DNA from: Ylistrum balloti
Taxonomy: Eukaryota
Direction: 5' to 3'
Assembly: GCF_031769215.1 (NCBI RefSeq)
Contig: NW_026781997.1
Location: 62,001-126,000 of the forward strand
Length of the DNA stretch: 64,000 nt
Positions 5,771 through 51,930 of this stretch are shown one piece after another. The position numbers and the translations under genes are program-made. Position 1 is the first letter of the stretch; each line of letters begins with the position of its first letter. The notes beneath the pieces are model-generated. The model was not told where the DNA came from. It ran no database searches and was given only the letters and a program-made list of their open reading frames with translations.

Positions 5771-7579
5771 GCTATGACTGCCAGTCTGAACAGAAACAAA
5801 ATCAAAACAGTAGCAAGGGGAACAAACATAGGGAATCTGAGAAATATTCATCCTGTACTTCTCAAGGAAGAGTGATAACAAGAATTGTTTGACAATAGAC
5901 GGACAGACCATAGGCCATCGACGCAGGACAATTTGAATAGCCAACCATCTGTTAATGTAGATAAAATGTCTGAAAAACAAACATCAAAATAAGCTTGAAC
6001 ATAAACTCCTTTACGAAATATATACATTTCTTGTATATTGGCATTTATATGAAGAGTAATGCAGAAAGAAAGTATGTAGAAAAGAATCGAGTTTTAGCAG
6101 TTGAAATGCTGACTTTCCTTTAAAGACCTTTTGTAGCTTTCTTTCATATGAAAATTTAATAAAAACATTGAATAGCAGAAGCAATCAATGTTCATGATGG
6201 TCACTGAGACAATCATACAAGCTCGCTTACTGGTAATTGGTGAAATATGTTGCAAGATAGCAAAGACCTTTGATAAAGTGACATTAACCTCTGGTCAGGT
6301 GACTCCTTGTTTATTTCTTACCACATTAATTTCATAGTCATCACAAAAGGTCCATCTGTGAAAAGATCACAATATCTGACCTTAAGCTATGATTTTTTGG
6401 CCTTGACATTTGACCTTGGTATTGATCAATTTGTCTGTGAGCCAAATATCTTTTGGCCAGGTTTCATATAAATAAGTCAACAGGGCCGAGTTAATTTGTC
6501 CAGAAACAGATAACAGATAAAGAGAGAACTGTTGTAGAAGTACAGCACATGTTATTTGGATGATTTGGATTTTACATAACCAATCATTCCACTTCCTCCA
6601 CACAGGTATAATGTGTAATAGAATGCTTACAAATCCCTCTCACAATCTTATTGCTGAAAAAAATCAAACTTACTTGGGGTTATACTACTGAGTATCTTTT
6701 AATGATATCATTTATCAAAATCGACTTAATTCTAAGGAAAATATTCACCATAATGGACATAAGGAAGCCAAGAGGTTAAGTTGAAGATTTTTTAAGTTTT
6801 TGTTAGAAATAGCAGGAATAATTATGTAATCATATAATGTAAAAAACATGTAAAACAACTCTATTTGAAACAACAAATACTGGAGTCACCCAATGTTTTA
6901 ACGTCAGTGTTCTTGAAGAAACATTACAAAAATTACATGGCATATCCATAAGTCTTTATGACAATTGAGGCATATTAACTAAAATAAACCCTTAACCTAG
7001 GGCTGTCATAGAATCAACTAGAAAGGAATTCTATGTTAATATGGAATTCATGAGCAAGACAAAAAAAATGCTGTAAACAAGGTGATTCTGATAAATGGCC
7101 ATTGGCTTAACCGGGTCCTGAGATTGGAGAAATATTCTCAAATGGGACAGTCCCTAATCAGCTGGATGAAGCCTGAGCCAAGAATTTTTTTTTTTATTTT
7201 AGATGTGTCCAAGCGCCAGATTAATCCTCCTCTTTTTTCCATCTTCAATATGTTTTTTGCCTGGGGTTTTGTCTTTTCTGAAGAATTCCTTGAAAACATC
7301 CTTAAGTTCTTCCAACTCTTTAAAGATCCACTTGTGCCTATTTAAAGTTGGCGCCTTCCTTTTGTCTGGTTCTGCAGAAATAAAGATTTTAATTGAAGGT
7401 TATTGATATGTTATAATAAAATCAACACAAGCAAACATACTACCTGACAGATCAATAAAGACAGACATAAAGTATAAAAGATGGATTTACTGACACAAAA
7501 GCTATGCACTAGACAGTAACCTGCTTATGAGAATGTGCTATTGAAGGAAAATGAGGTCAATGTGCTATTGAAGGAAAAT

Positions 7580-8135
7580 GAGGTCCACAGGCTTCAATGG
7601 TCAACTAACTGAAAGACCTTCAGAAATTACAAGATGGCAGCCATGCAAGCCATATTGAAGTTCAGATTGACCGAATAAAATAACAACAATTGTTCAAGAT
7701 CATCTTAGGCTCATATCAGGTAAGTTTCAGCTAAAACCTACTTCAGAAGAAGTTTAATGCCCTTTTTCAAAATGAAGTTCATGGCTGCCTTCATGGATTT
7801 TGGACCAGCCTGAAATAATTACACTTGGCCAGAACCATTTTGGAAGAATTTCTGTTAACTTACAGCTCAATCCCACTTACAGAAATTGAAAAGAAGTTTA
7901 AAATGTCTTTTTCAATATGCCGCCAATCTGAAACTTCAGATCAATCTAAAAAGTAACAACACTTGGTTAGACCATTTCGGGATTCTTTCAGGCAAGTTTA
8001 AGCTCCATCCCACTTGTAGGACTTGAAAAGGAAGCTTAAAATATGAAAAGTTTACACCTGGCGGACAACGGACAGAGGATGGTGCTTGACACATCCTGAC
8101 TCTTTGTGTCAGATGACCTATAAAGAGAGACAAAG
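7580..8135 (-). repeat. Helentron/HINE-type non-autonomous repeat in a YR1 intron
   Basis: Minus strand starts TTATTGGTCATCTGAC...TCTGTCCGTTGTCCG...TAAACTTTTCA, followed by degenerate internal units with CAAGATGGC(A/G). Confidence 0.55.
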
Positions 8136-10379
8136 TCTCTATAATCAGCTACCTAGATCCAAATTATTCATGGCGAATCTCCCCCATAACCTTTTCCTGT
8201 TTGATATTATTTATATACATACTACTTTTGGTGGGCTCCTCAATCTGTTCTAGAAGGTCTGGGATGAAATCTCCATCTTCTCGGCTGTCCTCTGTTTGAT
8301 CCAAACTTGCTTTTTCTGCATCTCCACCTATCTCTCCAAGATCTCTACTGTTTTCTAGCAACTCTGAATGTTGAAAGAATTATGTTTTTTAACAGAGGCA
8401 TATGCATTAAAAGAAACTACTTAATGCAGCATCGCATTGACAAAATTTCAATTTCATGGAGTTGAAGTAATTATTCTTAAACTCTCTAAGTAAATTATAT
8501 CATTACATGTAATCAATCCTAAGACAGGTTTCTTCCCTTTTGCAAGTTATAGTTTTTGTAGAATATTGTTAAGCTTTATCATTTCCTCATCAATTATTGT
8601 CATGATGGTAAATGAAGGTAGAATTGTGCCACAGTATCATAACTAGAACTATAAACACATTTGACCCTATGACCTTAAAAGGAGTTATTCATTTAGACAA
8701 ACTTATAAGACCTTCATCCTATCACGCTACATACCAAATATTAATGTTCTTTGCCGATCTTTTTTTTTCAAAGAAATTATTGAATGAAATGGTTATGCAA
8801 TAGCATGATGACAGACAAAGCATGATGGCAATAGGTGATATCAACCCCTTGGGTCAGTAACCTAAAATACTTAAGTTTAAAGCACTGTAGCATGACTTTA
8901 TTACCATCTAGCTGGATCTCCTCTAGGTTTTTTTCCCTTTAAATTTTCCAACCATTCTATTGTCCAACAGCAACAGCAGTTTTGCGATGTCAACCCTCTC
9001 TATCACGTCAGATGTACATTTATAGTGGATTCTGTGCACATCAAGTGTATGGCCTAGGTGATCCACCACCCACTGCTGCTGTTGAGGTTTTATTTCTATA
9101 GCCTGAAAAAATAATAATTACATTTTTTCGTTATCATTTGAAATGTTTCAAAGACTGAAGCAGATGTAAAAAAGGCATCCTTCCTTCCTGTTTTTAAATT
9201 TCATTGTTTTACTGTTCACAGACAAACCATTCTTTTCTTAGCTGAAAACCATCATACTCATTTGAAGCATTTATTCTTTCTATTTGTATCACATAACCAT
9301 GAACTGTAGTGCATAAGATAGTAGTTGTTCAAAAGTATTAATATAGAGATTGTTACTTTCTTTCTTACATTAACAAGCAGATGACCCCATTTCAACTGTC
9401 AAAATTAATACGAAACTTCCTGACCTCAAAAACCGAAAGGAAACTGCTCAATTACTCATTTGATAAATGTTATTAAATACAACCATTAAAATGCAACCTG
9501 TGTTAGAGTGGCCATGAGGCGTCTCATGTTTGTCCCCCTAATTCTTTCTGGGTTTGTAAGTCCTGCCTTCTCTGTCACAGATATAATAGCATCATATCAT
9601 CGGACAACACCACCTCCTTGATAGAAATAAAATGGCACATTGGATTTCTTTCTACACCACAAAAGTATCACTCATCAACTTCAAGGTGATATTAAGATCA
9701 TTTACAAATAGCAAACAAAATATTCAACATATATCAGTAAACACTGTACAACAGGGATAGCGTTTCTGCGATGATTTTAATTTCCAAATAAACCTTTGTC
9801 AACCATTTTTATTTGATACCATGCCAATATTGAAAAACACTAATTCTCAAGTACTTACTGTTAGTTGCAAATATGTATGGTTTGGAAGGAATTCCCACAT
9901 TCCTCCTTATCCCTGGGTCAGCTAGATATTTTAGAATCCTTCTGATGTGTGATGGCACTATCACTGGCACATATTTGCCACACTGTAATATGTAAAATAT
10001 AAAGAACTTTATTGACTTTGCTGAAACATAAAGAATATTTTTGGGACTATCACTTTTTCCTTCAGAACTTGGACTCATAGTCTCTTCAAGAGACCGATTC
10101 AAAACAAGATTCAATTTTCATTTGATACATTTGACAGCTATCTGCATGTCAATTAAAATAATACATGCATGTTTCACTGTTTTCAAACAGCTAAGATCAT
10201 GAGACTTCTTTTTAGATTTCTGCGCTAACCTTTCCTCTGTTTTCAATCACATCCTGTGATTCTACCAGTTTCTTCTCAAAGGAACTCAGGTTGTGTGCAA
10301 TCTCCTCAGATACTTCATCAATACATGTCTTTCTGTTTTCATAGGCCATCAAGCTGCAAGAACATAGTAAATTGAATTA

Positions 10380-10900
10380 TAACAAGAGGTCCAATGGCCC
10401 TGCATACATCGACCACCTGGTATTCAAAGTTTACATATCAAACTAATGACATACCTTACGTGTTAAAGAGGGTAGCTCCTAGATCCAATCATTTCCAACT
10501 AACTCCAAAACATTTACCTTACCAAAGTTAAGGATTCAGTTGATCATAAATTGCTTAAAGATTTTGATATTTGACCCCAATGACCTTGAGACAGGTTCAT
10601 CTGCTTTTTGTAGATATTGTCCGCTATGATCTAGGGAATGTACCTGCCAAATATCAGAAACTTGCCAATTTATTTTAGAAGCTGATAAGAAGTTAAAATT
10701 GGTGCTGGACAGACAAACCTGTAAGCCAAATTTAAAGTTGCAATGGCTGATATTTTAGATGACTTTGATGGGTCTCAAGACAGATTTTTTTATGAAGGTT
10801 CAAGATGTAATTATTAATTAAGAATTATGTAGTACTACCTAGACCACCACCTTAGCAAGGTGAACCAATATGTTTAGTATGAAGTTCCAGTGACTAGTAG
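10380..10900 (+). repeat. AACAAGAGG-headed interspersed repeat in a YR1 intron
   Basis: Head AACAAGAGGTCCAATGGCCC...ACCTG; internal TTTGACCCC/TGACCTTGA motifs. End uncertain. Confidence 0.5.
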
Positions 10901-13059
10901 AGTAAGAGATATGGACTGGAAAGTCCTTTTTCTCTTATATAGGTCAAAGTCAAAATGTAGGTCACCATGATCAAATTTTACACACAACACACCTACTCAG
11001 CAAGGCTAACCTATATGCCAAAGGGAAAGACAAGACCCAACCCAAAATTATATACCTGACACTATGGTAATTGCAGGAAAATATGATGGGAAAATAATCA
11101 TCATTATCAAGAGAATATAACAGAGAAATCTCCATACTTCATATAATCCAAGGATTAGACAATCAAGAAAATTACCCAAAGCGTTTCACAGTCACACACT
11201 CAAGGTAGGGGAAGATTCTTTTAATCCTTCAATCACATTATAATAACTTGGATTATAATACCTCAGTGCTTGGATCTCTCCTGGTCGCCGTCTGTTGTAG
11301 GTTATAAGCCCAGCCTCAGCCAGTATAACACCATTCCGAAAGTTCTCATATGAAGTGTCTTCTATGTTGAAGTTTTCCATTTCAGAACGCAAGTATACCG
11401 CCAGCTTTTGGACATCCTCGGGTAAAGGTAGAGGTTTATTCTTCAAGTGCTTCCTCTCTTCTAATGCTACTCTAGACAGCTTTGTTGTCCATTCTAATTG
11501 CATCAATTTTAGGAAATCCTTTGCCTCAGATTTCTTTATGTTGTCGCATTGCTTAATCGCATTGGCAAGCTTTAGATTTCCCATTCTTTTTAAGTCATAT
11601 GCTAATTTGATGGCATTAGATGGGGCTTCAATCTTCTCCTCATCATCCTCATCTTGTCTTGCAACTTTTAATGTAGCTTTTGCAATTTCAGTGAAATACA
11701 TTGGATGAATGTATGACTCAAGGTCCTTTCCACTGGCAGGAGTTACCATGCTGTTCAACTGAATTAGGAGCCTGCTGGCAAGTCGCATAACTGCAGAGGC
11801 ATAATATTTCCGCATTAATTTGTTACCAACGTTACGGCGCATCCACTGATTTCCTAAACCTACAATTAGTCTGTCCTGTCTTGCCAAGACACCAACTTTG
11901 TAGTCTTTCATGATTGGAAACACTTCCCTTACCAAAGTTTGGTCAGCCTCTCCAGTAACCCTTCCTGCTAATACAGCACTTTGAATGAGGAGATTTCCTT
12001 TTGAAACATGTACAGAAGCTGATTTCTTACTTGTTGTGCACTTGTGTCTATGTATATTTGCTAAAAGAATCCAAGACAGACAATTTGGACAAGGTCCATA
12101 GTTGGAAACACTGAATTTTTTCTCATTGCACCGGCGAGAAAGGAGTAGTTCTCCTTTCTTGGCTTTAAGCACATCTTCATTGTGCTGGTTGTTTCCTTTG
12201 TTTCTAAGATCAGTTAACAATAACTTTTTGTCTTTTCCTTTGGCACACAACAGCTGTTTTACAAGAGGTTCATTTCTATGGTGTTTTGACATGACATGCT
12301 GTGCAAAACTGGAACATAATTTTTTGCAAAAAGGACAGCAATTTCTGGTATTGTAAACACGGTCACTTCTTTTAGCCTTTCCATTTTTACTGGTTGAAGA
12401 ATGTCTAATTTTTTTCACAAAAATGCTTTAACAATCTTCATCTCGGAAAATTTCATCTTCATCAAGATCACTTTCATCCTCCTGTTCAGAACTGTCATGT
12501 GGTTCTGTATTCAGTGACAGTGGTCCAAAGCATGGAACATTTGGAATAATATCTGACAGATCTGAATCACTATCTTCTACAATTTCAGACCCTTTCTCCA
12601 CTTTCAATCTTTTTACTTTAAGTCTGGAAGAAGAAGCAATACCTCTCTTTGATGTAACGTTTGATTTTGACTCTTCTATCATCTCATCATCTTCACTAGA
12701 ATCACTTGAATATGGTGAATATTCCGAGACACTAGTTATCAACAGTGCTTTCATCAGACATTTCAAAACTTTGATCACTATCCATATCACACTCTAAGTT
12801 ATCAGCTGTTTGATTGTCAGAATACATGTATGGTGATAAGGTTGGATTTGGTGCTACCACAGCAGTTTGAAGGAAAGTAGTCATCCCATCTTTCATCCCA
12901 AATTCACCTTTGAATAGATAATTCTCACCATTGGAATCTTTCACACTCACAAAATCAGGAGACGAACTGAATTTAGAACTGGAATGATAACCATGTACAT
13001 CTAGTTTACTTGGCTGTTTAAAAGACACTGAAGAGGAAGGAAGTTCACAAGACATCAAG

Positions 13060-13525
13060 GTGGTAGGCACAATATTGGTAGGCAGTTCACAAGAAGCTGA
13101 GGTGGTAGACAGTTCACAAGATGCTGAGGTGGTAGACAACAAATCAGTATGCAGTTCACAAGATTCTGAGGTGGTAGACAACAAACTGGTATGCAGTTCA
13201 CAAGATGCTGAGGTGGTAGACAACAAATCAGTATGCAGTTCACAAGATGCTGAGGTGGTAGGCAGTTCACAAGATGCTGAGGTGGTAGGCAGTTCACAAG
13301 ATGCTGAGGTGGTAGACAGTTCATAAGATGCAGAGGTGGTAGACAACAAATCATTATGCAGTTCACAAGATGCTGAGGTGGTAGGCAGTTCACAAGATGC
13401 TGAAGTGGTAGACAGTTCACAAGATGCTGAGTTTGTAGACAACAAATTGGAATGAAGTTCACAAGATGCTAAGGTGGTAGACAGTTCACAAGATGCTGAG
13501 GTGGTAGACAACAAATCATTATGCA
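13060..13525 (-). repeat. Coding minisatellite, 27-bp and 42-bp units (L(P/S)TTSASCE / LHTDLLSTTSASCE)
   Basis: Repeated CAGTTCACAAGATGCTGAGGTGGTAG(A/G) with an optional 15-bp CAACAAATCAGTATG insert; ORF 12732..13526 is open across it. Confidence 0.95.
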
Positions 13526-13815
13526 AGCAGTGTAACCCTTTGGACTCTTACCTGTTTAGTTATCTCAATATCTACTTTATACTTCTTTAAGAGATACTTG
13601 TTGTTTTTCAGCTTCCCTGAAACAAACAAAATGCACTTTACTAAACTACATAAAACAGACATGGAATTTTCATCAACACAAGGGTTTTTAAATATAACAG
13701 GAGATCCAAGAGTTTTTGAAATAAACTTTTGATAAATCATGGAATATTGTTACATTATTTTGAAATACATATCATGTTACAACAATGTTAATGCTGTACA
13801 TCAACATGTACAAGG

Positions 13816-15443
13816 CTAGTTTGTCATGAACACTATTGCTGTAGTTATCAAAACAATGTCCTGATAGTGCTGGACAGCATGATAATCATGGTTGATATCC
13901 TCTGATATGATAACATCTGACTCACGGACAGTTCTATTTTGGGATTTATAGTAGGACACAATGGGATGGATGGTAATTTGTTCCTTACTGTAATACACCG
14001 ATTTGATTTCATCCTGGTATTTTACCTCCCGGTTTCTTGCGAAGTCCATTACTTGCAATAGGCAGTTTTCAGGCAGGTTCTGTTTGATGGAAGTAAACTG
14101 CATAGTTTGCCAATTGGCAGTGTTCAAGTGTTGAAAAAAGATGTTCCTGACGTTGGCTCCTCAATGTCTTTAAGGAATTCTTCGAGCAGTTCATGTTTCT
14201 GTCCTTGTCTTGTAGTGAGGATACTTTTTTTCTTTTTCTCAATTTCAGTGTAGGTCCATCTACTCCAGGTCAATAGCGTCTCATCTGAGATCTCTTGATG
14301 AAAAGTATTAAGCTTTTGTTTTCTGGTTTCCCTCGGACCACATGTTTTACATGTTCCATTTATACAATCCATCTTGAAGAACCTCTCTGCATCTGACTTA
14401 GGACAAAGCAACATCTCGCATATTTTACCTTCGGAGGTAACTTTGGATTCTCTTTTTACGTGTCGACTTAATGTCAGCATTTTCTTTCGTATGTTTATGC
14501 AATATACACAACAAAATAATTCTGTTGTACAATGCCGGACACTGTCACTTGCATCAAGTAACCTGGACCAGCGTTTGTAGTTTAATGCTTCTGGGGCACA
14601 ACTCTATAAATATCCTCCGAAAGTAGAACTTCTTGATAGTTTCATTTACAGCATTGCACCTCTTACCTTTAGTGACCTTTTTCTGATTTAAACTGATTGT
14701 TCTTCTGTTCATTTCCAGTTTCTTCGCAACAAATCTTCTACTCTTGTTTTTATACTGCCTGGCTACTTCTTTCAGTGCTGATTTACCTTTTAGTGTTTTT
14801 TTTAAGGGTTTTTATCAATAATTCTTCATCATTTTTGACTGAGATTGTTTCAATCACTGCCTTCTTGTGTGGAGAGAGATTTTTTTGTAAATTGTCCAAC
14901 ACTTTCACAAACTTCCTTGGTGATGATGGGAAAGCCTGTCTGACTTTTGAAGTTACATTCCACTCAGTTTTCTTTGAAGAAAATGGTGTTTTTTCTATGT
15001 TTGTTAATGAGGTTTCAAGTTTTCGTTTTGTGTTAGTGATCTGTTGTCTTTTGACTCTTTTTATTTCTCGGTCTTTCTTTTTTATCCAATGTTTCTTCTG
15101 TACAGACATTCTGGCACGGGATTCTTGTTTTTTGATACGATTATATTCCTTTTTAGATTTAATACTCTTTCTTGTCTGTATAACAACTTTTGGGGATTTT
15201 GACTTTGAAACTTTCATTTGATATTCACCTGGATGGTCTTGGTCTCTGTTCTTCTTTTTTTCCATGTATCTCTTTTGCCGCTCCCTCTGCTTTTCCAACA
15301 TTCTTGCCTTTTTTTCCAATGCATGTGTGTCTTTCTTTAAAACTCTTTCTTTCAGGTGATCTCTTGCTTTTTTTCATCTTTCTGTTTTTTCAGGTATAAA
15401 TCATAGTTTGGATTTTGTTTCCGGCTCCGGATTCCTGATTCAC
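13816..15443 (-). pseudogene. Degenerate DDE DNA-transposon transposase, tentatively Sola(2)-like
   Basis: Fragments 14783..15319 (basic coiled region, 'PSSPRK'), 14124..14480 ('CINGTCKTC', 'WSRW') and 13816..14127 ('VMDFARN', 'QDEIKSVYY..QITIHP', 'ISEDINHD'). C-terminal part missing. Family name is from memory of motifs. Confidence 0.6.
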
Positions 15444-16120
15444 CTTAAAAAAAAGAAGAGTTAATGTCAGTGTTATGCCGTACGAATTGAGAACAAACAA
15501 CTCTGCATAAAGTGTCACCATGTATTAATCAAAATGCGGTGAAAACCTACAATCAAAACAGAACAAATACTTACAAATGGAATGACAATACAAATTCATA
15601 TGACGTACAATTATAGAAACCGTATACGTATGACGTACCCGGAGATATGACGCTAAATACCAGTTTAACTTATTGCCACAAACCAGACTTCCAAATCGTT
15701 TTAACCGATGGAATATAACTAAATTAACACCAGAAAATCCACAAATGTTGTCAAACGATAAATCAAATTGGCGTCAAATCATCGGCCATGCCATACCACA
15801 AACCTACACAAAATATTTAACCTGTCTATATTAATGCACCAACTCAAGAATATCAAGATGAAATATCAGTTAAATGTCTCACATTATTTTATAACTATCA
15901 TCTATAATTGACTAGAATGCGTAATGAAAGGTATTTATATACACATAACGCCATGTAACCAAAGTTGTTGAAACCAAAAGTACACTGGATTCCGAGAAAT
16001 TCAAAGTTTATCGATAGCATGTGTTTACAAATATTTTGACCATAATCAAACCTAATATGCATAGACTACACTATGACAGTCAATCATTAACATAGATAAC
16101 ACGTAATGCCATTTACTTAC

Positions 16121-16213
16121 AGAGTGTGAGCCACTAGACTGCCAGAAATCTTTGTTAAATGCCATATACAAATGTATCCTGTGCGAGCACGCCGCAACTA
16201 TGGGTGCCGCCAT
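16121..16213 (-). CDS. Putative first exon (MAAPIVAACSHR...GSHS) of the YR1 unit
   Basis: ATGGCG start, 31 open codons, strong GTAAGT donor, CpG-containing upstream region. The link to YR1 is inferred; its phase does not match exon 13616 directly. Confidence 0.45.
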
Positions 16214-16439
16214 TGCCTAACCTGTTTATCCAAAAACACGAGGAGGCCCAACTAGTCGATAAGATAAACCAAAACAATCGCCAAACTAGGCGATAAGTGT
16301 CAATTAACTAAAAATGGTCAAATATCACAAATTATCCAAATTAACAAAAGAACATTAATCTAAACACCAATTAATCTTATATTTTAACAGAACAGTCAGA
16401 GACACAGATTTATTTACATGATAGGTTATATTCACTATC

Positions 16440-16740
16440 AATTCCATTGTCAAGGTTAAGGTTTTGTATAAATATTGTCAATTTCCCTTTTATGCACAGT
16501 TATATCCCTGCTTCCCCTACCCATGATGTCTCCATGTCCCCAGTTGATCGGATATTCATGGGCTTGTACTAGATATCATGAGTTTTACATAAGATCTAGA
16601 CAGCTGGTAAACAAACTCATGTGGCAGCATGATGAAGATTATAAGAAAATTTTATGGTCGCTACCACAATTTTGTTAGGAAATGTTCTGTTTCCTTGAAC
16701 GACATGAGGTCAGACATTTTTTAGACCATATTTTTGAATG
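16440..16740 (+). mobile_element. 3' fragment of a non-LTR/Penelope-like retroelement RT (C-terminal region)
   Basis: Degenerate 'IVNFPFMHS', 'PQLIGYSWAC..Y.EF..R.RQLVNKL..Q', 'RKFYGRYHNFV', resembling the SQLIRY.RAC / KFYGRY tail of abundant mollusc retroelements. Confidence 0.6.
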
Positions 16741-19700: not shown

Positions 19701-20347
19701 CAACAAACAGCCTGGTGTTGGCATATTTAAAGGAGTTAAGGAATTATACATGTATACACTGGTGAAAAGCATTGATCGGTGAAAGATATTTCACATCAGA
19801 TCGTAATTTTGTTTCCAGAACAATAAAAAATGTCCACAAAACAAAATTCAATAAAATCAATTTATATCAGAAATCTCAAAATTGAGATAAATGAAACAAT
19901 AAAGCAAGTACAAAGTTACCATTGTACATGTTAGTCAACATACAATACTGGTATACAGTAACTGTATCCATTTAACATTTGTTGAGCCTTATATAAACTT
20001 TAATAAAAATGCACATTGTATCACAAAAATACATTCATAATAACTGCACCTGGCATGAATATCAACAGAAAATAAAAGGCAGATGGACAGAGAAGAAAAC
20101 TTCAGTGCCTAAGTTGGGGATTAAAATATCACATGATACCAGATTATTGAACCACAAGGCTTATCCCAGTTTTTAAAAGACAAACTGTTAAACTTGAATA
20201 AAATGCTTGAGGATATACTTAATCCATCTCACATATTTATAAAAAAAAATATATTCATTACAATTATTACACTTTCCAAGTGCTAAATTTTGATCAATTT
20301 CAATTTGAATAGTCTTGTGTCATTTAACTTCCAATTTAACACCTTCT

Positions 20348-36036: not shown

Positions 36037-36049
36037 ATCCTCGTCGCCA
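36037..36049 (-). promoter_or_regulatory. Primer-binding site TGGCGACGAGGAT (tRNA-Ser type)
   Basis: One base after the LTR; complementary to the AUCCUCGUCGCCA 3' end of tRNA-Ser(GCU). Confidence 0.8.
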
Positions 36050-36050
36050 C

Positions 36051-36190
36051 TGAAATGTCCGAGGCAAGGCTTGTATTAGCTGATTTACGGGAACAAACGA
36101 GGAGCACATGGTTTCATGTTTATTCCAAAATGGCGGGCAGTCATCAACAACAATAATGAGCATGCGCAATACACATACAAATTGGTAACA
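36051..36190 (-). repeat. 5' LTR of Gypsy-2 (140 bp)
   Basis: TG...CA ends; its 3' end (TGCCTCGGACATTTCA) is duplicated at 34031-34046. Confidence 0.85.
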
Positions 36191-37150
36191 CTAAACACTG
36201 TTGGATGGAAACAACAACCGCCCCAGACTAGTATGATTCTACAAACATTACACTTATGAACTTTTTCTTCTTTTTTTTTTTAAGTTACGATTTTATATCA
36301 GTTAAATGCAGAAATATTTTGAAAATTGACGTGCACAGCCCATCTCTAAAAGTGAGCAAAAACACATCATCATTTCCAATTTATATTCTTAATTTCTTTT
36401 ATTGTGTATAAAGAAGAACAGTTTAAGGCTCACAAACATAAAATATGTGATACAAGATATACGTTTTGCATAAAACAGGTGGCATACAACAAAACCAATT
36501 ATTTAAAAATACATCATCATTTGCCATGTCTGTTTGTCAAGGAGTTAAAATCTGTCAAAAACACCAATTAAATCAAAATCAAAATTCATTTATTATTATA
36601 TGCATTGATTTTTTCTTCATTGAAAGTGTTTTTTACTGATAAAAATGGAAGATAACAACATCATGAAATAATAATTTCAATTAAAAACCTTAACTAGCAG
36701 AAATAAATGACTTTACACATTTTGACAGACAGTGATGCACTTTTATATGGAAGATGTCGTATATCATTCCAGATCAAGGGTCACATGATGGAAATGTAAT
36801 TCAAATAATTTTGAACTCCGATGAGATGTTGATAATTTGCACAATTGTTTTGCCATTTATGTTGTCAAAGTAATATATTGGCTCTAAGAACCAAGTAGAA
36901 ATAACTTGGTAATAACTTGGTGATAACAGGGCACTGTATGTGCCAAAAATACACTTCATATTAGGCATAAATTTTGCATAATATCTCCAAAATGCATCAC
37001 ATTCTTCTGATGAAATGCTTGCCAATTCTTCTGTAAAAGATACATGTATGGACTTCGGCATGTCTGTCTGATATGTCAATTGAAGTACAACCCATAAACT
37101 GTTTTTACAATTTCTAAACTGTTACAGGCATCATTCGAATATACACTTAC

Positions 37151-44400: not shown

Positions 44401-45593
44401 GAAAAACAATCCCAAAGTCCAAGATTAATATTAATATTGAAACAAGCAAATTCGTGGAATTTATATCCCCCGCTTCTAATTATTGACCTTGACCTTTGAC
44501 CTCCACAGATGAAAAGCAATCCAACACAAATACTTTTTGTCATTACCTTCTAAAGTTATTTCATCCAATGTCTTCCCAGCATACTTGTGACAATTGCCAT
44601 TGTCAACAGCTACAAGTAATTTACTAACTTTCGCCAGCTCAAGAGTTTGTTCCTGTAGGCGATAGAACCGTCTGTGAACAGTTATTAAGTGCCCCATATG
44701 ATTTGCTAACCACTCAAGCTCATTTTGAGAACCAAGGTCAACAACCTATATCAAATAAGAATCAGAAATAATTTAAATGGTTTAAATTGATTTAAATTGT
44801 GATTAAGAACAAGAAGCAGTCTTTGAAACCTGAAAGGTCAAAAGGTCATTGAAGTCATACAGAATTACTAATGCTGAATATTGACAACTGTACAAATATG
44901 ACATGGAGAACGTTTACTTGTACATGACACATATTGCATTTAGAATAAAATTGTTTCAAATGCCTTCAATGCCAACTAGAAATGGGCAGATTAAGTTTTA
45001 CTTTTCTTAAAAAGAGCTGATCTGATATAGGTGATAGTGTATATATCATACTTAATCATCAAAACTCCACATAAAAATATCCACTAGTTGTGCCACATAA
45101 TCCTTACATATACCATACTTTCCAACCCAATGAAAATGTTCAGAAAGGTATTTGTTATTAAATAATAAAGTCATGAAGATATACCTGTGAAACAGTAGCG
45201 ACGTATTTACGCATGTTTGTTGATGTCAAAAGTTCTGCCTTCTGAAGCCCTGCTTTTCGTGTCACAACATTCAGAGCTTCCCATCCCCTTAGATAGCCAT
45301 TTTCTGTTGAAGGGGCAGCAAAAAGATACTTGTTATTCATGGGTACCCCTACATCAGACCGTTTAGCCACTAATAAATCAATTGCCTTTCTCATGTCTTC
45401 GGTAAGTAACACAGGTACTTTCCTATTCTTTTTCCCAACAGCCTGAAACAAAGTAGATACTGACGTTAATAATATTGCGGAGTACAATCATAACATACCA
45501 CATAGAATGTATTATATTCTGAATCATCTGTTAAACAATTCCATCATAAATTTAGTATTAACGACTTATAAATGACCATAAAAAGACTGTGTA

Positions 45594-46650
45594 CGAGGGC
45601 GAATCAATAGTATCCAGCCTATCCCATTTCCGATTTAGTCACTGAAAAGCTTTAATTTACACTGCCGCCTTTGTAGCTAGTCAACATTGATAAATATGCA
45701 GTATAGTTCCAATTTGACTTTGTGCAACGAACTACAAAAGCATTTAAGCGCTAAAATTAAACACTGAGGATTGTAAAACACCAACGTTTGACACACCAAA
45801 ATTAAACCACCATATTTTGAGCAAAAAAAGCCAAATTTTAGCAACGCCGAAATATCCCAAAGTACAGTAATTCGGTACTTGTATTTAAAAGGTAAAACAG
45901 GCAAGGAAATACAAAGTGATTTAGCTGATATTTATGGGTCTTCTGCACCATCTTATGCTCTGGTTAAATTCTGGATATAGGAATTCAAACGGGGTAGAAC
46001 ACCTTTAGAAGATGACGCCCACTGGATGCCACCAACAAAGAAATGTGTAACAAAGATCAGGATCTGGTATATTCTGATAGGTGATTGTTTAGGTATAATA
46101 AAGCTCAGTCGTCAGTGGATAGGGCCAGGGTCTCCGAGGCCAAAGAAGTTAACGATGTAACTATCTGCTGGCAAGGTGATGGTCAGTATTTTGGGATGCA
46201 AAAGGCGTTATTATGTTAGACTTTTTACCCAAGAGAAGCAAAATAACTGGGGTGTCCTAGAAAAACTTGCTAGACCAGCTGAGAATCACCATCCTTGAAA
46301 AAAGCCCAAGTAAACTCTCTAAAGGTGTTTTGCTACAACAGGACAACATGAGAGTCCACACTTGCAAAGTTGCAAAGGATGCCGTAGAGCAAAACATGAA
46401 AAATTAATACCACATCCTGCCTATTTGCCTGATCTAGCACCTAGTGACTTCTTCCTATTCCCAAACTTGAAAAAGGCTATCCGTAGGAATCCAGTCTGAT
46501 GAAGAAGTGGCGACAGCAGTTGAGGAATGGGTCAATTGAAAGGACCCTGACTTTTTTAGTTCTGGGCTGATGACACTTGAACACCGTTCGTCTAAGTGCT
46601 TCACACTAAAGGGCAATTACATCGAAAAAGAAGAGGTTATCTCAACCAGA
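45594..46650 (+). mobile_element. Degenerate mariner element in a YR3 intron
   Basis: Starts TA|CGAGGGCGAATCAATA. Decayed 'VIRYLYLKGKTGKEI...FKRGRTPLEDD', 'SAGKVMVSI-WDAKG', 'QQDNMRVH', 'HPAYLPDLAPSDFFLFPNLK'. Right TIR not seen. Confidence 0.9.
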
Positions 46651-46830
46651 AACTAGAAATTTGTTTTTGTGACCAAAAACATGTCTACCCTTCCTAGCAC
46701 AAAATTGTGATATTTTGACCTTTGACCTCAAGGTCAAGGTCACAAGTCTCCCTTCATTCGAAGGAGAGACAAAATAAGGCTGGTTACTTATTGACTCTCG
46801 TATATATGGATCTTAGGTGTCATTAGCATT

Positions 46831-47788
46831 ACAAGAGATCCCAGAGGGAGTTTGACAACCACCAATGAATGATATCGTTTCTCCCTCTTATTCATTTAAT
46901 AACAAGGGGCATCAAAAAAAGATCTAAAAAGACCTTTTTTCTGAGATATACATGTACGTTGATAACAAATTTCCACTTTCAAAGTCAAAGTTGTGAAGGT
47001 TGCCAGCTGTCAGCCATTTTGTTTTCTTGATCTAATTCAAAACTAGCATAACTAGGGACCAAGGAGAACCTAACTATGAAGTTTGAGAAATATCTGTAAA
47101 GCGCTTCTCTATGAAACAGTGATTATATAACTACAAGTCATTAGCTCTCAAAATTGAAATAACTAGGGGTCAAATGGCACCTAAAAATGAAATTTGAGAA
47201 AGATCCATCCATAACTTCTCATAATTAACAATAACAAATTTTCAGCATCAAAATTCAACACGGTCAATTGTCAGACATTTTGGGGTCTTTCTTTCTGATG
47301 TGTCCCACTGTCCCAAAGTCAAAAGTGCAAAGCTTAAACCACGGAAGCGTATATATGTATAAAATTTGAGAAATTAAAATCCATTCAGTAATTCTAAAGA
47401 AATAGCAATCACAAATTTCCATTGTCAATATCCAAGATGGCTGACTGTCAGCCTTTTGTGTTATTGTTAAGAAATATCCATCCAGTATTTCTCAAGAAAT
47501 AGCCATATCAAACTTCAATTGTAAAAATCCAAGATGGCTACTTGTCATCCATCTTGTTTTGCTGATCAGATCCAAAATCAATGGATACAACTAGGGACCA
47601 AGGGAAACCCACATTGAGAAGTTTGAGAAAGATCCTTCCACTACACCTAAATAAATAGTGATAACAAGACTTATTTGCAGATAGATGACGGAAGGATGGA
47701 TGAAAGATCACGGATGCAAGGTGATGAAGTGCAAACACTTTGTGTCTTTTGTTCAAATAGAACATCATCAGATGGTGGGCTAAAATAT
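46831..47788 (+). repeat. Family A Helentron/HINE-like repeat
   Basis: Head ACAAGAGATCCCAGAGGG; several AACTAGGGACCAAGG/AAATCCAAGATGGC units; tail GATGGTGGGCTAAAA. Confidence 0.75.
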
Positions 47789-48980
47789 GCAATACATGCA
47801 AGTACTTTATAGAAATCAATGTTAATAGATTGGTATAATAAAACCCGTCTATAACTAGCTGTAGCTGGCTTGGTTGGAATACAGGAGGTAAACGACTGAT
47901 ATAAAGGATGATTTATTTTATTTCGTTCCATGTATCACCTTTACACCTTAGAAAACTGCGACGATTAAACAAACAAACCTTTACCATCATTGAAGTTATT
48001 ATTCAAGGACATATTAATTAATTGCACATGATGAAATTAAGCAGGTATATTATGTGCTATGTATTAAGATATCATAGTATTCTCGTACAGTTTACCGTCT
48101 CCATGACAGCTATATTTCAAGAAATGATCGTTTACAAATTAATTACGTTAAACAAAAAAAATGTGTAACAATTAAAATACGTTAAATTTGCCACAAAGAA
48201 ATTAATCAATCTGCAAACGTTTCTATGCCAACAACCGTCATAAAGACCGCCAACCATACCCTTAATATGTAAGCACAACAAACTGGTAATCTAATAAATG
48301 TGTAGCACAACAATACTACCTGATGAAATCGAAACCGAAAGTAGCATGCTCTATGAAAATCGCTTGAGCATGCAAACCCTACAATGACCAACTATGCACT
48401 GTTTCAATAATTATGTTTGCAGTGAGCATTTACAGATTGTAAATCATGGATATAGAACCATTAATTATGAAATCAGAACAATAAATGATCAAACATACTT
48501 CACGGGGAAGGGGAGGTAACTCTACTATACAAAACTACATGTTCTCATATAGATTTCAATGATCGTGATTATAAACTGAACTTAGGATTATACAGAACTA
48601 ACATGCAGTCCTTGCGATGCATAAACATTAAACGACATTACAGAAAAACATTTTTGCCTTGTTCCCTGACAACCAAGTGCTAATTTTATCAATTTTCTTT
48701 CGTTTAGCCACTTGGCTCCTTCGTTTCTTCAACGTTCGTTACCGGAAGTACTATACTAATAATGGAAACCTTTATCCGGATTTACAAAAAAATCGGATTT
48801 ATCATATACATATTTTACACACATACGAGGTTATGAGCAACGTCAAATTTAACTTTAAGAAATTTAAAACATGGACATTTACACTAGCCTGTTTGATACA
48901 AATCTTTACATGTTACGAACAAAATACTTATTTCCGGCAATTTTCTTCTTTGTTCTTACCAAAAAAATATGCTTAATATG

Positions 48981-49957
48981 AACAAGAGATCCCAGAGGGA
49001 TCTTGGCACCCACCATTGAACTATCTGTCAGTCCTATGAAAGACCAATCTTTCCCCTGCTTTTCTCTTCCTCTTCATCATTTGATAGCATCAAAATCCTG
49101 TCTATTGTCTATGAAAGATCTAAGAACTTTCTTATACAGATGTATATCAATAAAACTCTTCTGATATCAGAATCTAGTAAGTTCATTAAACACAACTAAC
49201 GACCGAGGAAACATTTTGATAAAATCTGAGATATCTATATCTTGTCAAAATTCCAATTGGTCACATGTAAAAGCATTTTAATTCTGACTTGTTCAAAAAT
49301 GGCACTTTCACAACTTATGACCAAGGGGAACCTTTACATGACCTTTGAGGAAGATCCCTCGAGTACTTTCAAACAAAGTGGAACAAATCTCAACTGTCAA
49401 AATAAAAGATAACCAGATGTCAGCTGTTTTGTTCATCTGATCAGTTTCAAAGATAAACGTTATGATTGTTACCATGTTCTTTGTGGAATCAACCCAAAAA
49501 GGTACAATCCAAACTTAGGGACCAAGGGTAACCTACATAAGAAATCTGAAAAAGATCCATTCTGTACTCCTTGAGAAATAGTTGTAACAAACTATTAATG
49601 TCAAAATCCAAGACGGCTGCTTGGCGACCATATTGTTTATGAGATCCGCCTAAAAATGGTTAAATGCACAACTAAGGAGGAAGGGTTACCTACACATGAA
49701 ATTTGAAAAGCATCCAACAAGTACCTCCAGAGAAATAGCAATAACAAACTTTCCCACTAAGATCCAAGATGGTGGCCTGGTGGCCATGTCGTTTATGGAA
49801 TCTACCCAAAAAAAGATACAATGCACAACTAGGGACCAAAGGGAACCTACATACTTGTTGAAAAATAGCGATGACAAGAATAATTTACGGACGAACGGCG
49901 GACGATGGACGAAAGGCAATTTAAACAGCCCACCATTTAATGATGGTGGGCTAAAAA
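48981..49957 (+). repeat. Family A Helentron/HINE-like repeat, full-length
   Basis: Same head and internal units; GACGAACGGCGGACG microsatellite; 10-bp hairpin AGCCCACCAT-TTAATG-ATGGTGGGCT (49927-49952) then AAAAA. Confidence 0.8.
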
Positions 49958-51709
49958 TGTTAAAGTTAAATAAAAAAATTAATCTATAGTTTAATCTCAG
50001 ATATTATTCGCAAGCAGCAAAAAACTGTTTAAAAGTGCATTCAGTACACACTGTGTTAATCTCTCATACTTTTCTTTTTAAAATAACAATCCATAATGAC
50101 TACAAATATGAATTATATCTATCCATAAGCTTGACTTCGATAGGCTGCAAAGTGGAAGTGATCTCTCTATTTTCAGCTTCCTTCCAGTTAGTTTTCCTGT
50201 TTTTATAAACAGACAAGAGCATTTGCCCAGCCTCACCACCTCTTCTTTTGTTGAAGACAGTAACACGACAAAGGCTCGTCAAAGCGAGGTTCCTCCAAAC
50301 ACTCGGTGACAATTCTGGTCCTTCAAGCAGCTTGCCGAGATCCACCATTTCTTTCAACAGGAAGTTTCTACACTTCACAATGTCTTCTGTCAATGGTAAA
50401 ACATTTGGTTCATTAAACTTTCTTTCTGAAATACTTTGAAGAGCGTGGCTGCTGACTTTATCGGCCCATTCTGCTTCATGCAACATCATGTATTCCTCAG
50501 CATGTTTTTTGCTTTCTATGTCATCATCCCGGAGAGCTTGACCAAGTTTGATTTGAGCCATTTTCTTCAGAGTATGTCCTAATTTCAGTGCTAACGTAGG
50601 TTTGTCATATTTGGGACATCCACGCTCTGTCCAATTGTCTGCACTGTCTGTATCCTTTACACTGCATATGCTCTGTATTCCTTGAACCAATAGGCAAATC
50701 CTTTTGGTTTCAAAAAGTCTCCTATTACTGCTGATGGTTTTTTGCCCACTTGTCGGAGATGAACAAGAAGCCTCCCAACCTCCCGCACTTTCTGTCGAAC
50801 AATTGGTTTCCTTGACTTTCCAACTTTTTTCAACATACTGGATCCCAACTTAAGAATGCATGTGTCTGTCTTTATAGCATCCAGTATCTCATCTTGCTTC
50901 ATACCTGCCAGTACCTCCATAAATTTGTCATCTGATCCTGAGATTGTTGAATGTAACAGTAACTTCGCTGAAAGTTTAAGGTTTTTGACACAGAAATCTT
51001 GCATACTGGTAGCTTTCTCTTTTAATGGGCTTTCTCTGACATGACGCCATAAGTCTTGTGACAGATAAAATCCAAGACAACGTGTGCATGGTAAGAATTC
51101 ATCAGAGTCTTTAACACCTTTTGGACGTCTGTCAACTATCAAGCTACCTTTCTTATCAGAGATAACTTTCAAATTGTGGTGGAAATTTCCTTTATTCCCA
51201 AGTTTCTTCCATCCTAGCTTTCTATTTTTGCTTTTTGGACAGAATATGTGCTACTTCTACCTCAGAGGAGGGTTTGTTTTGTAAATGATCAGATATTTTT
51301 GAGTATGTCCCATTGCAGTAGAAACAGGCATTTCTCTTGTCGTACATTCTTTTCCCCTCTTTCGATTTGTGAGCCTGCGATACAGAAACTGGAAAACAAT
51401 ATTAATAAGACAAACAGGGGAAAAAATGTTCAATTCAGATTACTGCCGGAAAAAATATTCTCCTAATATTATATAAGCATCATCCACCAAACGAATGTAC
51501 TGCTTTATCCTATTACCAGTGAATACTAAATGATCATGATGCTCCAAGTCGAATATTTCGTGAAATTTTGCAATTCTGAAGTCATGAATTAATCTAAAAT
51601 TAACTAGAATCCCATTGCTGTATACTCTGATGTCAAAGCTGTCGGCTGGCACAAATCTTTTCACAATTTCCAAATCAGACAAGGAAAATACCAAAATTGC
51701 ACCTGGGGA

Positions 51710-51930
51710 TCTTTGCGCCATTTTAATTCCTCGTAAACTTAAATGAACTGCTGCTCGCGTTATACCTCACAAAGAACTTTTCATTCTACTCGGGACTCAC
51801 CTTTTCCGCAGTTCTCACCTTCATCAACCATCTGATTGGAAAATACCCGGATGCGAAAAATTGCGCTTGTTCAATGAATCAAGCGTCTGGTTGAACGAGA
51901 CTAAAGTTGCAGACCACTCTTATTGGTTGC
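51710..51930 (-). promoter_or_regulatory. Putative Pol II promoter of YR3
   Basis: AAAATGGCG (YY1-type) overlapping the ATG; CCAAT on the minus strand at ~51835 and ~51923; CpG-rich relative to flanks. Confidence 0.45.

What the first reader, a model, noticed from the sequence alone, without database searches (positions are those of the whole stretch)
7150..51930. Same-strand cluster of three divergent, intron-rich tyrosine-recombinase units: candidate family of large cargo-bearing YR transposons in an animal
Seen: three clearly paralogous but very divergent spliced genes (YR1, YR2, YR3) lie on one strand within 45 kb. They share an architecture: RxY..CxxC..H zinc motif, a second (Y/F)xPCxxC motif, 'A.KL...(I/L)K(R/K)', 'LPL..D', 'N(R/K)RRxxE', 'xGK..VPV', 'TNMR(R/K)', '(L/M)GH..VH..(H/F)Y'. 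Each is preceded by its own ATGGCG-starting putative first exon, and unexplained ORF remnants flank YR1 and YR2. Established: R-K-R-H-Y is the tyrosine-recombinase catalytic set; Cryptons are eukaryotic YR DNA transposons; fungal Starships are giant YR-mobilised cargo elements. Inference: these are 8-10 kb YR elements that insert next to or into each other, or one large multi-YR element. I cannot tell whether this subfamily is already catalogued.
Basis: partly seen in the sequence, partly recalled or inferred. Interest (0 to 1): 0.8.

Follow-up and report, generated by a model that had tools for sequence, protein, structure and literature searches.

The report
Three decayed tyrosine-recombinase transposon relics
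Three broken, head-to-tail copies of a widespread but unnamed animal tyrosine-recombinase (Crypton-like) transposon family sit in a scallop transposon graveyard; the genes between them belong to other, younger transposons and are not cargo.

Summary
Three paralogous tyrosine-recombinase (YR) genes lie on the minus strand: YR1 at 7199-13526, YR2 at 37149-40058 and YR3 at 44548-51386. They are 26-47% identical to each other.

They belong to a large pan-metazoan family of 'uncharacterized proteins' (the genome is Ylistrum balloti). No Pfam model covers the family, but its structure model matches XerH, Cre and other integrases. The catalytic R, K, R, H and Y are conserved, along with two zinc fingers and a Myb-like tail.

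None of the three is intact:
- YR1 has a frameshift, two stop codons (one polymorphic) and a second frameshift.
- YR2 is frameshifted and lacks the exons carrying the second Arg, the His and the Tyr.
- YR3 has two frameshifts and has lost a zinc ligand.

Each is single-copy at the DNA level. YR1 differs from a second individual mostly by non-synonymous changes, so it looks unconstrained.

The DNA between YR1 and YR2 is one 4.5-kb repeat split by three younger insertions, one of them a 15.3-kb CACTA-type element. All occur elsewhere without a YR, so cargo is not supported in this window.

A sister lineage elsewhere in the genome does form ~18.4-kb repeated units that carry a Ras-like ORF. That is only a lead.

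Verdict: ordinary relics of a Crypton-like family. The head-to-tail array is mildly interesting.

The parts
7199..13526 (-). YR1: the most complete unit. It has N-terminal coding tandem repeats (13110-13516), an acidic region, and 7 exons at about 12427-11262, 10353-10230, 9982-9859, ~9619-9498, 9102-8905, 8363-8221 and 7371-7199. RRRPGE, GKYVPV, TNMRR and GHTLDVHRIHY are all present. Lesions: a frameshift at 12732-12790; a TAA at 12428-12430; a TGA at 9597-9599; a 1-nt frameshift in an A-run near 8935; and a shortened Myb-like tail.
   Evidence: HMM maps. Splice sites and lesions read directly from the sequence. The RefSeq model P0121 (LOC132545279, Ylistrum balloti) is 100% identical but skips exons 4-5 and starts after the first CxxC. 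The TAA aligns with a Lys in the Mizuhopecten (P0122) relative, in sequence that Argopecten (P0129) shares. In a second individual the TGA reads GGA (at 9599).
37149..40058 (-). YR2: a 3'-truncated unit. It has coding tandem repeats (39593-40058), exon 1 in two frames (39218-38475 and 38505-37895, with a 1-nt frameshift near 38478), exon 2 at about 37661-37533 and exon 3 at about 37277-37149. The invariant Gly of RRRxGE is replaced (RRRCHE). There are no exons for the second Arg, the His or the Tyr, and no tail.
   Evidence: The three intron positions and phases are identical to those of YR1.
44548..51386 (-). YR3: coding pieces at 51386-51225, 51238-50681, 50615-50118, 45451-45182 and 44730-44548. 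KRRGGE, GKKNRKVPV, TNMRK and GHLITVHRRFY are present. Lesions: a frameshift near 51235; the invariant second His of the first finger is replaced by Pro; a frameshift near 50680; no canonical splice donor at 50118; a 4.7-kb repeat-filled gap; no detectable tail.
13853..36762 (-). Repeat R, not part of the YR units. It is a ~4.5-kb element that is contiguous on contig C1023. Here it is split by three insertions: 15471-16394, 18099-33382 and about 34035-36253.
   Evidence: The seven C1023 pieces (13929 down to 9398) match window 13853-15470, 16395-16987, 17135-17687, 17689-18099, 33383-34034 and 36254-36762 at 94-99% identity. No YR match was found on C1023.
18098..33386 (-). A nested 15.3-kb CACTA-type DNA transposon with ends CACTG...CAGTG. 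It carries the F-box/LRR ORFs (20348-21039), a 435-aa ORF (22802-24109) and a 935-aa ORF with C2H2-like zinc-finger motifs (29876-32683) that I take to be its transposase by position. Not part of the YR units.
   Evidence: 99% identical copies on C133 and C257, and in part on C695. Ends read. Pfam results.
34045..36258 (-). A nested, truncated LTR retrotransposon with gag, a zinc knuckle, RT and one LTR. Not part of the YR units.
   Evidence: Pfam RVT_1 and Retrotrans_gag. 99% identical copies on C117, C278, C390 and C6, with paired ~250-bp LTRs.

Best explanation
YR1, YR2 and YR3 are old, inactivated insertions of three different lineages of one pan-metazoan family of tyrosine-recombinase DNA transposons (Crypton-like in the broad sense).

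The intact family protein has these parts, in order:
- a variable N-terminus made of coding tandem repeats;
- a C2H2-type zinc finger and a C2HC-type zinc finger;
- a helical core-binding domain;
- a catalytic domain with R (RRRxGE), K (GK..VPV), R (LRK), H and Y (GH..H..Y);
- an acidic linker and a Myb/SANT-like tail.

By analogy with Cre, Xer and Cryptons (inferred, not shown), such a protein would excise its element as a circle and re-insert it by conservative site-specific recombination. That reaction is orientation-specific. Repeated integration at or beside a resident copy would therefore build a head-to-tail array like this one.

Afterwards the three copies decayed through frameshifts, stop codons and truncation. 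Younger, unrelated transposons then inserted between them: repeat R, a 15.3-kb CACTA-type element and an LTR element. Those insertions stretched a compact array to 45 kb. None of the three units can move now, and the window holds no cargo belonging to them.
For: Fold and chemistry:
- The AlphaFold model of an intact paralog has pLDDT 88.
- Its best PDB matches are all tyrosine recombinases: XerH, XerA, Cre, IntI, Tn1549 Int and lambda Int.
- There is a weak Pfam Phage_integrase hit.
- The catalytic and zinc-binding residues are invariant or nearly so across 61 members.

Transposon-like behaviour:
- At least 93 matches in the genome, many with stop codons and some intact at 600-1040 aa.
- Bounded repeated units at 92-96% identity lie in different flanks.
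- Relatives occur in molluscs, fishes, echinoderms, hemichordates, a priapulid and insects.
- In a tree, YR1 and YR2 group with sequences from other species, including echinoderms in YR1's case, rather than with each other. YR3 branches apart from both.

Decay:
- Lesions were read directly from the sequence.
- YR2 lacks its catalytic exons.
- None of the coding parts has a second DNA copy in the genome.
- A second individual carries the YR1 locus with other indels. There the stop codon reads Gly, and 10 of 11 exonic differences are non-synonymous.
- The Argopecten relative is a fragment in an unrelated context.

No cargo:
- All intervening DNA is accounted for by R and three nested elements, each with 94-99% identical copies elsewhere and no YR beside them.
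Against: - I could not compare the family with Repbase or Dfam, so its Crypton subgroup, and whether it is already catalogued, is unknown.
- No element ends, target-site repeats, circular junctions or empty sites were seen for any member, so mobility by a YR mechanism is inferred.
- The family does not match DUF3504, the CryptonA signature.
- Intron positions are conserved between scallop and echinoderm members. This could equally suit an old host gene family.
- RefSeq annotates YR1 as protein-coding, and no RNA data were available to test that.
- Targeted, oriented integration is only one way to get the array. All nine transposon coding units in the window are on the minus strand, which points to a property of the region rather than of the YR family.
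Confidence: 0.72

Rival explanations
1. The co-orientation and clustering are properties of the locus, not of the recombinase. The region is a transposon graveyard or a one-strand piRNA-type cluster in which insertions of any family are retained in one orientation. The three YR relics landed there independently, without any target preference. This rival concerns only how the array arose. It shares the 'decayed transposon relics' core of my best explanation, so its confidence overlaps with that one.
For: - All nine transposon coding units in the window are on the minus strand: two retrotransposons, R, the CACTA-type element and its ORFs, and the three YRs. The two-sided chance of this is about 0.4%.
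- The same contig holds a fourth YR copy on the minus strand, 20 kb outside the window.
- The nested young elements (99% identical copies elsewhere) show the region still accepts insertions.
Against: - No small-RNA or RNA data exist to show a piRNA cluster.
- YR copies also lie in neighbouring pairs on other contigs: 8 of 10 pairs within 50 kb are co-oriented, against about 0.3 pairs expected by chance (tallied). This suggests something specific to the family, although these contigs are repeat-rich and partly duplicates of each other.
Confidence: 0.3
2. The three units are a tandem cluster of domesticated host genes. These would be recombinase-derived DNA-binding proteins, comparable to the ZMYM/KCTD1-type Crypton derivatives, that arose by local duplication and are fixed in scallops.
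For: - Each unit is single-copy at the DNA level.
- Introns are conserved in position and phase between YR1, YR2 and echinoderm members.
- There is a RefSeq gene model for YR1.
- The YR1 locus is present in a second individual.
Against: - All three units carry multiple frameshifts and stop codons.
- YR2 lacks half of the protein.
- The stop codon in YR1 exon 4 is polymorphic, and each allele carries its own coding-region indels, including a frameshifting 1-nt deletion in the second individual.
- 10 of 11 exonic differences between alleles are non-synonymous.
- YR1 and YR2 are closer to sequences from other species, echinoderms included for YR1, than to each other, so they are not local duplicates.
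- The Argopecten relative is a truncated fragment.
Confidence: 0.07
3. The whole 45 kb, or each 8-10 kb unit with its neighbouring ORFs, is one large cargo-bearing YR element. This would be the animal counterpart of a fungal Starship.
For: A sister lineage on other contigs forms ~18.4-kb repeated units. Each holds a YR gene, tandem repeats and an intact 180-aa Ras-like ORF on the same strand. Large gene-carrying YR elements may therefore exist in this genome.
Against: - In the window, every ORF between the YR units belongs to elements with their own ends and their own 94-99% identical copies elsewhere, without a YR.
- No part of the YR units recurs anywhere at the DNA level.
- No Ras-like sequence was found in the window.
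- The family does not match DUF3435, the Starship captain domain.
Confidence: 0.03

Closest known systems
Crypton DNA transposons (Goodwin et al. 2003; Kojima and Jurka 2011, PMC3212892), especially the animal groups
   Same: - The only enzyme encoded is a tyrosine recombinase, with no reverse transcriptase.
- The one repeated unit examined has no terminal inverted or long direct repeats. The paper reports the same for animal Cryptons.
- The elements are multi-copy and patchily distributed across animal phyla, and some lineages carry introns.
- The motif around the second Arg is (S/T)x(L/M)RK, much like the NxSxRK of the scallop's own DUF3504 elements.
   Different: - No member matches DUF3504, and the profile-profile comparison is not significant. 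The paper reports CryptonA recombinases matching DUF3504 at E of 8e-12 or better.
- The protein is far larger. It has two N-terminal zinc fingers, coding tandem repeats and a Myb-like tail, whereas the paper describes animal Cryptons as having no C-terminal domain.
- Whether this family equals Repbase's CryptonV or another group could not be tested.
Starship elements of fungi (DUF3435 'captain' tyrosine recombinase)
   Same: A tyrosine recombinase gene sits at one end of a large unit. The sister lineage's ~18.4-kb unit carries an extra gene downstream on the same strand. A language-model search gave weak leads (score 0.88) to DUF3435 clusters.
   Different: There is no DUF3435 match at the sequence level. 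The host is an animal and the unit is ten to forty times smaller. The single extra ORF shows no sign of selection. No ends or target sites were defined, and the window holds no cargo at all.
Domesticated Crypton-derived genes (ZMYM2/3/4, QRICH1, KCTD1, KIAA1958)
   Same: They are recombinase-derived animal genes with introns, each present as a single locus.
   Different: Those genes are conserved and syntenic and have lost catalytic residues while staying under purifying selection. Here the catalytic residues are kept where the exons survive, but the frames are broken and evolve without visible constraint.
DIRS/Ngaro tyrosine-recombinase retrotransposons
   Same: They are animal mobile elements that use a tyrosine recombinase.
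   Different: They carry reverse transcriptase and RNase H alongside a short recombinase. Here the reverse-transcriptase ORFs in the window belong to separate LTR elements with their own copies elsewhere.

Membership tests
Tyrosine recombinase superfamily | Two-domain fold: a core-binding domain plus a catalytic domain of the Cre/Xer/lambda-Int type | tested here: met
   The model of the intact paralog (pLDDT 88) has XerH, XerA, Cre, IntI and Tn1549 Int as its best PDB matches. Foldseek probability is 1.00 and about 400 columns align. The structure atlas also returns bacterial and phage integrases.
Tyrosine recombinase superfamily | Catalytic residues R, K, (H), R, H/W and the Tyr nucleophile | tested here: met
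   R374, K422, R497, H523 and Y532 are invariant or at least 90% conserved in 61 members. The usual first His of HxxR is Ser or Thr. YR1 and YR3 keep R, K, R, H and Y. YR2 keeps only the first R and the K, because the rest of the gene is missing.
Crypton superfamily (broad sense) | The element encodes a tyrosine recombinase and no reverse transcriptase | tested here: met
   The intact 939-aa copy is the only ORF of 150 aa or more in its 10-kb locus. In the 18.4-kb unit the stretch downstream of the recombinase exons holds no ORF I recognised as RT on reading the translations, though no Pfam scan was run on it. The RT ORFs in the window belong to other elements.
Crypton superfamily (broad sense) | Short (4-6 bp) direct repeats at the ends, and excision as a circle | tested here: inconclusive
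   A sharp 5' boundary was seen between two copies of the sister lineage, and no terminal repeats were found. The 3' ends vary between copies. No empty sites or junction reads were available.
CryptonA | The recombinase matches DUF3504 (PF12012) | tested here: not met
   No DUF3504 hit for the intact paralog at E up to 1, or for any of 61 members at E up to 0.01. hhalign against the scallop's own DUF3504 elements gives probability 0.5%. The genome's 57 DUF3504 matches all lie at places other than these loci.
CryptonV and other Repbase/Dfam Crypton groups | Sequence similarity to the curated consensus proteins; insertion into microsatellites for CryptonV | not testable with these tools
   Repbase and Dfam are not on hand. 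The held literature only names the group (PMC8869645, PMC5753468).
Starship | DUF3435 captain recombinase at the 5' end of a large cargo-bearing element | tested here: not met
   No PF11917 hit, only a weak feature-based lead. The window holds no cargo.
Domesticated recombinase-derived host gene | Intact frame under purifying selection, with syntenic orthologs | tested here: not met
   Lesions are present in all three units. The stop codon is polymorphic, and 10 of 11 exonic differences are non-synonymous. The Argopecten relative is truncated and lies in an unrelated context. Full synteny could not be tested.

The most novel reading that the evidence does not exclude
The family may be an undescribed, pan-metazoan group of tyrosine-recombinase transposons with its own architecture: tandem-repeat N-terminus, two zinc fingers, recombinase and Myb-like tail, sometimes with a SET, FHA, BRCT or kinase domain annotated upstream in the same predicted protein (real fusion or prediction chimera, not checked). 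Its members would integrate in an oriented way beside resident copies, building head-to-tail arrays of unrelated lineages like the one in this window. At least one scallop lineage would have grown into ~18-kb elements carrying a Ras-like GTPase gene. That would be the first animal counterpart of gene-carrying YR elements.
Probability: 0.2. Interest if true: 0.65.

Novelty: new member of a known kind. Interest (0 to 1): 0.35.

Why it matters
For this window, the result mainly tidies up the annotation.
- LOC132545279 is best read as a decaying transposon gene.
- The 'cargo' is a nest of other transposons.
- The apparent 45-kb cluster was once a compact array.

More broadly, the family is abundant in animal genomes, with hundreds of 'uncharacterized proteins' from molluscs to fishes. 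It has no Pfam model, so it is invisible to routine annotation. A profile for it would clean up many gene sets.

If the arrays and the 18-kb Ras-carrying units prove to be products of recombinase activity, they would give a testable animal system for site-specific, gene-carrying YR transposition.

Tried and rejected
- Pfam on all exon-sized ORFs gave no hits. Only the full-length paralog gave a sub-threshold Phage_integrase match.
- The PDB sequence search found nothing.
- hhalign against DUF3504 elements of the same genome was not significant.
- The search for RNA runs found none, so expression, splicing and the RefSeq exon skipping could not be tested. The single DNA run was used instead to check the lesions.
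- The four near-identical 940-950-aa copies (C593, C793, C1164, C1194) could not be used to define element ends. Their 99.3-99.9% identity runs beyond the 11-13 kb that I had fetched, so they may be haplotigs or segmental duplicates.
I therefore did not read the rest of contig C140 with its fourth copy, or the flanks of the other 18-kb units, and asked for no further loci for that purpose.
- The Ras-like ORF was searched for beside family members in Patiria, Holothuria and Pinctada and was absent. Between copies it shows 5-6 non-synonymous against 3 synonymous codon changes, so there is no sign of selection.
- A tblastn of the 935-aa ORF against phage records was uninformative.
- The upstream 'ATGGCG' ORFs showed no similarity to family members.
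- The literature searches found no description of this family.
Units were analysed exon by exon, and the tree used a region that is uninterrupted in each unit.
Full report
**What is there.** All long ORFs of the region lie on the minus strand. I built a family HMM from relatives of an intact paralog. It maps three units.
- YR1 has seven exons between 12427 and 7199. Coding tandem repeats (13110-13516, 27-nt periodicity) and an acidic stretch precede them.
- YR2 has its own coding repeats (39593-40058), exon 1 (39218-37895) and two small exons that end at 37149.
- YR3 has coding pieces at 51386-50118, 45451-45182 and 44730-44548.

Pairwise identity between the units is 26-47%, with E from 1e-10 to 1e-52, so the paralogy is real. 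I analysed the units exon by exon.

**What the family is.** The genome is Ylistrum balloti: RefSeq protein LOC132545279 is 100% identical to YR1. The window is part of a 187-kb contig of a 648-Mb assembly.

The family is large. A search with YR1 exon 1 gives at least 93 matches in this genome. A profile search scored only 69 of 395 candidates. Copies range from intact intronless ORFs of 600-1040 aa to fragments with stop codons.

Outside the genome, relatives at E below 1e-120 occur in oysters, clams, other scallops, zebrafish and other fishes, sea urchins, sea stars, sea cucumbers, a hemichordate, a priapulid and a beetle. Every one that carries a source name is 'uncharacterized' or 'hypothetical'.

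Pfam gives only a sub-threshold Phage_integrase match, and only in 3 of 61 members. DUF3504 and DUF3435 are never hit.

An AlphaFold model of the intact paralog (L004:6575-8302, pLDDT 88) has tyrosine recombinases as all of its top PDB matches. These include XerH, XerA, Cre, the integron integrase, Tn1549 Int and lambda Int, and both domains align.

The alignment shows these invariant or nearly invariant residues:
- a C-x2-C...H-x4-H finger;
- a PCxxC...H...C finger;
- N-R-R-R-x-G-E;
- G-K before VPV;
- L-R-K;
- G-H-x4-H-x3-Y-R.

Complete members end in an acidic linker and a conserved W..E...PGK..C...W..K..V.N tail. I read this tail as Myb/SANT-like (with a lead). Some subfamilies carry SET, FHA, BRCT or kinase domains upstream.

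**State of the three units.**

YR1:
- The repeat ORF and the acidic ORF are in different frames (12732-12790).
- A TAA at 12428-12430 aligns with a Lys in the Mizuhopecten (P0122) relative, in sequence that Argopecten (P0129) shares. No ATG lies between this stop and the first CxxC.
- Exon 4 carries a TGA at 9597-9599, at a position where YR3 has Gly (…LRGWEAL…).
- An A-run near 8935 shifts the frame of exon 5 just before the conserved …LEEIQLD….
- The RefSeq model avoids these lesions by starting after the first CxxC and skipping exons 4 and 5. That removes the second Arg, the His and the Tyr.

YR2:
- It has a 1-nt frameshift near 38478 and RRRCHE in place of RRRxGE.
- No trace of exons 4-7 exists anywhere in the window, by regex or by two HMMs.

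YR3:
- It has frameshifts near 51235 and 50680.
- Pro replaces the invariant second His of finger 1.
- There is no canonical donor at 50118. A 4.7-kb gap follows, filled with satellite-like and other repeats. No tail is detectable.

None of the coding parts has a second DNA copy in the genome. Only the repeats around them do.

Contigs from an independent run, about 1% divergent, cover the YR1 locus collinearly. In that individual the exon-4 stop codon reads GGA (Gly). The same allele has a 1-nt deletion in exon 1, extra bases at the 12732 and 12794 frameshift site, and a 57-nt deletion in the tail exon. Of the 11 exonic single-base differences listed, 10 change the amino acid. This is the pattern of an unconstrained sequence.

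The closest Argopecten relative is a fragment covering half of exon 1, with no similarity in its flanks.

**Introns.** YR1 and YR2 share three intron positions and phases: phase 2 after …LR/MR, phase 0 after RGK, and phase 1 after …ATN/SAG. The same exon breaks recur in a sister lineage on other contigs and in Patiria and Holothuria members. YR1 and YR3 also share the phase-0 intron after …(T/S)Q.

The clade related to the intact 939-aa ORF is intronless. The introns are therefore old features of one subfamily, not decay artefacts. In a tree of the region uninterrupted in all units, YR1 groups with Mizuhopecten and Argopecten sequences and then with sea-cucumber sequences. YR2 groups with other, unnamed sequences, and YR3 stands apart. 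The three are therefore not local duplicates.

**What lies between them.** Contig C1023 holds one contiguous ~4.5-kb repeat, R. Its pieces match, in order and at 94-99% identity, window 13853-15470, 16395-16987, 17135-17687, 17689-18099, 33383-34034 and 36254-36762. In the window, three insertions split R:
- a 0.9-kb repeat (15471-16394);
- a 15.3-kb element (18098-33386) with CACTG…CAGTG ends and 99% identical copies on C133, C257 and C695. It carries the F-box/LRR ORFs, a 435-aa ORF and the 935-aa zinc-finger ORF;
- a truncated LTR retrotransposon (34045-36258) with 99% identical copies on four contigs.

C1023 shows no YR match. With these removed, the last YR2 exon lies about 0.7 kb from the first YR1 coding repeat, and YR3 ends 4.5 kb before YR2. 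The original structure was a compact head-to-tail array of three unrelated lineages, with YR2 truncated where YR1 begins.

**Why an array.** Two readings remain open.
- Conservative site-specific recombination is directional. Repeated integration at or beside a resident copy would give this arrangement. In support, YR loci pair up on other contigs: I counted 10 neighbour pairs within 50 kb among about 60 scored loci, where about 0.3 are expected, and 8 of the 10 are co-oriented (one-sided p about 0.055). The count comes from the tables. Its caveat is that these small contigs are repeat-rich and partly copies of one another.
- Every transposon in the window, of any class, is on the minus strand, 9 of 9. 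A fourth YR copy, also on the minus strand, lies 20 kb outside the window (C140:40030-41804). This points to a regional cause such as a one-strand piRNA cluster. I cannot separate the two readings without RNA or population data.

**The sister lineage.** Copies on C1094, C1114 and C1261 are 92-96% identical over a bounded unit of about 18.4 kb. The unit has a sharp 5' boundary, unrelated 5' flanks and no terminal repeats. C1281, C510, C1098 and C1011 also hold parts of it.

The unit holds several kb of coding tandem repeats, a five-exon recombinase core plus a tail exon, a second tandem repeat, and an intact 180-aa Ras-like ORF with a CaaX end on the same strand. Diverged Ras-like relics (31% and 36% identity) also lie 3-6 kb downstream of YR matches, on the same strand, on C617 and C219.

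Against a functional role, codon changes between copies are 5-6 non-synonymous to 3 synonymous. No Ras-like sequence lies beside the family members examined in three other species, and none lies in the window. This is a lead for the cargo idea, not evidence about the window.

**Comparison with known systems.** The family works like, and by definition falls within, the tyrosine-recombinase DNA transposons called Cryptons. It is not CryptonA, because the DUF3504 test failed. It is not a Starship captain, because there is no DUF3435 match. It is not a DIRS or Ngaro element, because it has no RT of its own. It does not behave like the domesticated ZMYM/KCTD1 class.

Whether it is Repbase's CryptonV or another catalogued group could not be tested. 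The held literature says only that CryptonV is a cnidarian, microsatellite-targeting group (PMC8869645) and describes no family with this architecture.

**Verdict.** The paralogous recombinase units are real, with YR2 incomplete. The cargo and large-element interpretation fails for this window. The units are ordinary decayed relics of a widespread but poorly annotated Crypton-like family. What remains interesting is the head-to-tail array and the Ras-carrying sister units.

Noticed in passing
window 18098-33386: A 15.3-kb CACTA-type DNA transposon with ends CACTG...CAGTG and 99% identical copies on contigs C133, C257 and, in part, C695. It carries an F-box/LRR gene, a 435-aa ORF and a 935-aa ORF with C2H2-like zinc-finger motifs. 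It looks recently active and really does carry a host-like gene.
   Followed up: partly
L015:5013-5552 (contig C1094:78012-78551) and its copies on C1261, C1281, C1114, C510 and C1011: An intact intronless 180-aa Ras-like GTPase ORF with a CaaX end lies inside an ~18.4-kb repeated unit, downstream of a tyrosine-recombinase gene on the same strand. Diverged Ras-like relics sit 3-6 kb downstream of YR matches on C617 and C219 as well. Changes between copies look neutral.
   Followed up: partly
window 1313-51721, minus strand: Every transposon coding unit in the window is on the minus strand, 9 of 9: two retrotransposons, repeat R, the CACTA-type element and three YR relics. A fourth YR copy at C140:40030-41804 is on the minus strand too. 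This may be a one-strand piRNA-type cluster.
   Followed up: no
window 13110-13516 and 39593-40058; L001, L002 and L004 upstream of the recombinase core: In YR1, YR2 and both sister lineages examined, the recombinase ORF begins with long coding tandem repeats, 9-aa units in YR1 and YR2 (27-nt period). The repeat sequences are unrelated between lineages, and the arrays reach several kb in the 18-kb units. Their role (protein, binding sites or target-derived DNA) is unexplained.
   Followed up: no
window 9599 and 7307-7365 (YR1): A second individual reads GGA (Gly) where the assembly has the TGA stop codon in exon 4. It also lacks 57 nt of the tail exon. The RefSeq model LOC132545279 skips exons 4-5, probably because of this stop codon.
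   Followed up: yes
family members in other species (P0008, P0040, P0084 and others): Many fish, echinoderm and oyster members have SET, FHA, BRCT or kinase domains annotated upstream of the recombinase core. Structure-atlas clusters of several hundred chordate members are 92-99% SET-positive. Whether these are true fusions or gene-prediction chimeras was not checked.
   Followed up: no
contigs C593, C793, C1164, C1194 (L004, L007-L013): Four copies of an intact 940-950-aa family ORF are 99.3-99.9% identical over more than 11 kb, flanks included. They may be haplotigs, segmental duplicates or a very large young element.
   Followed up: partly
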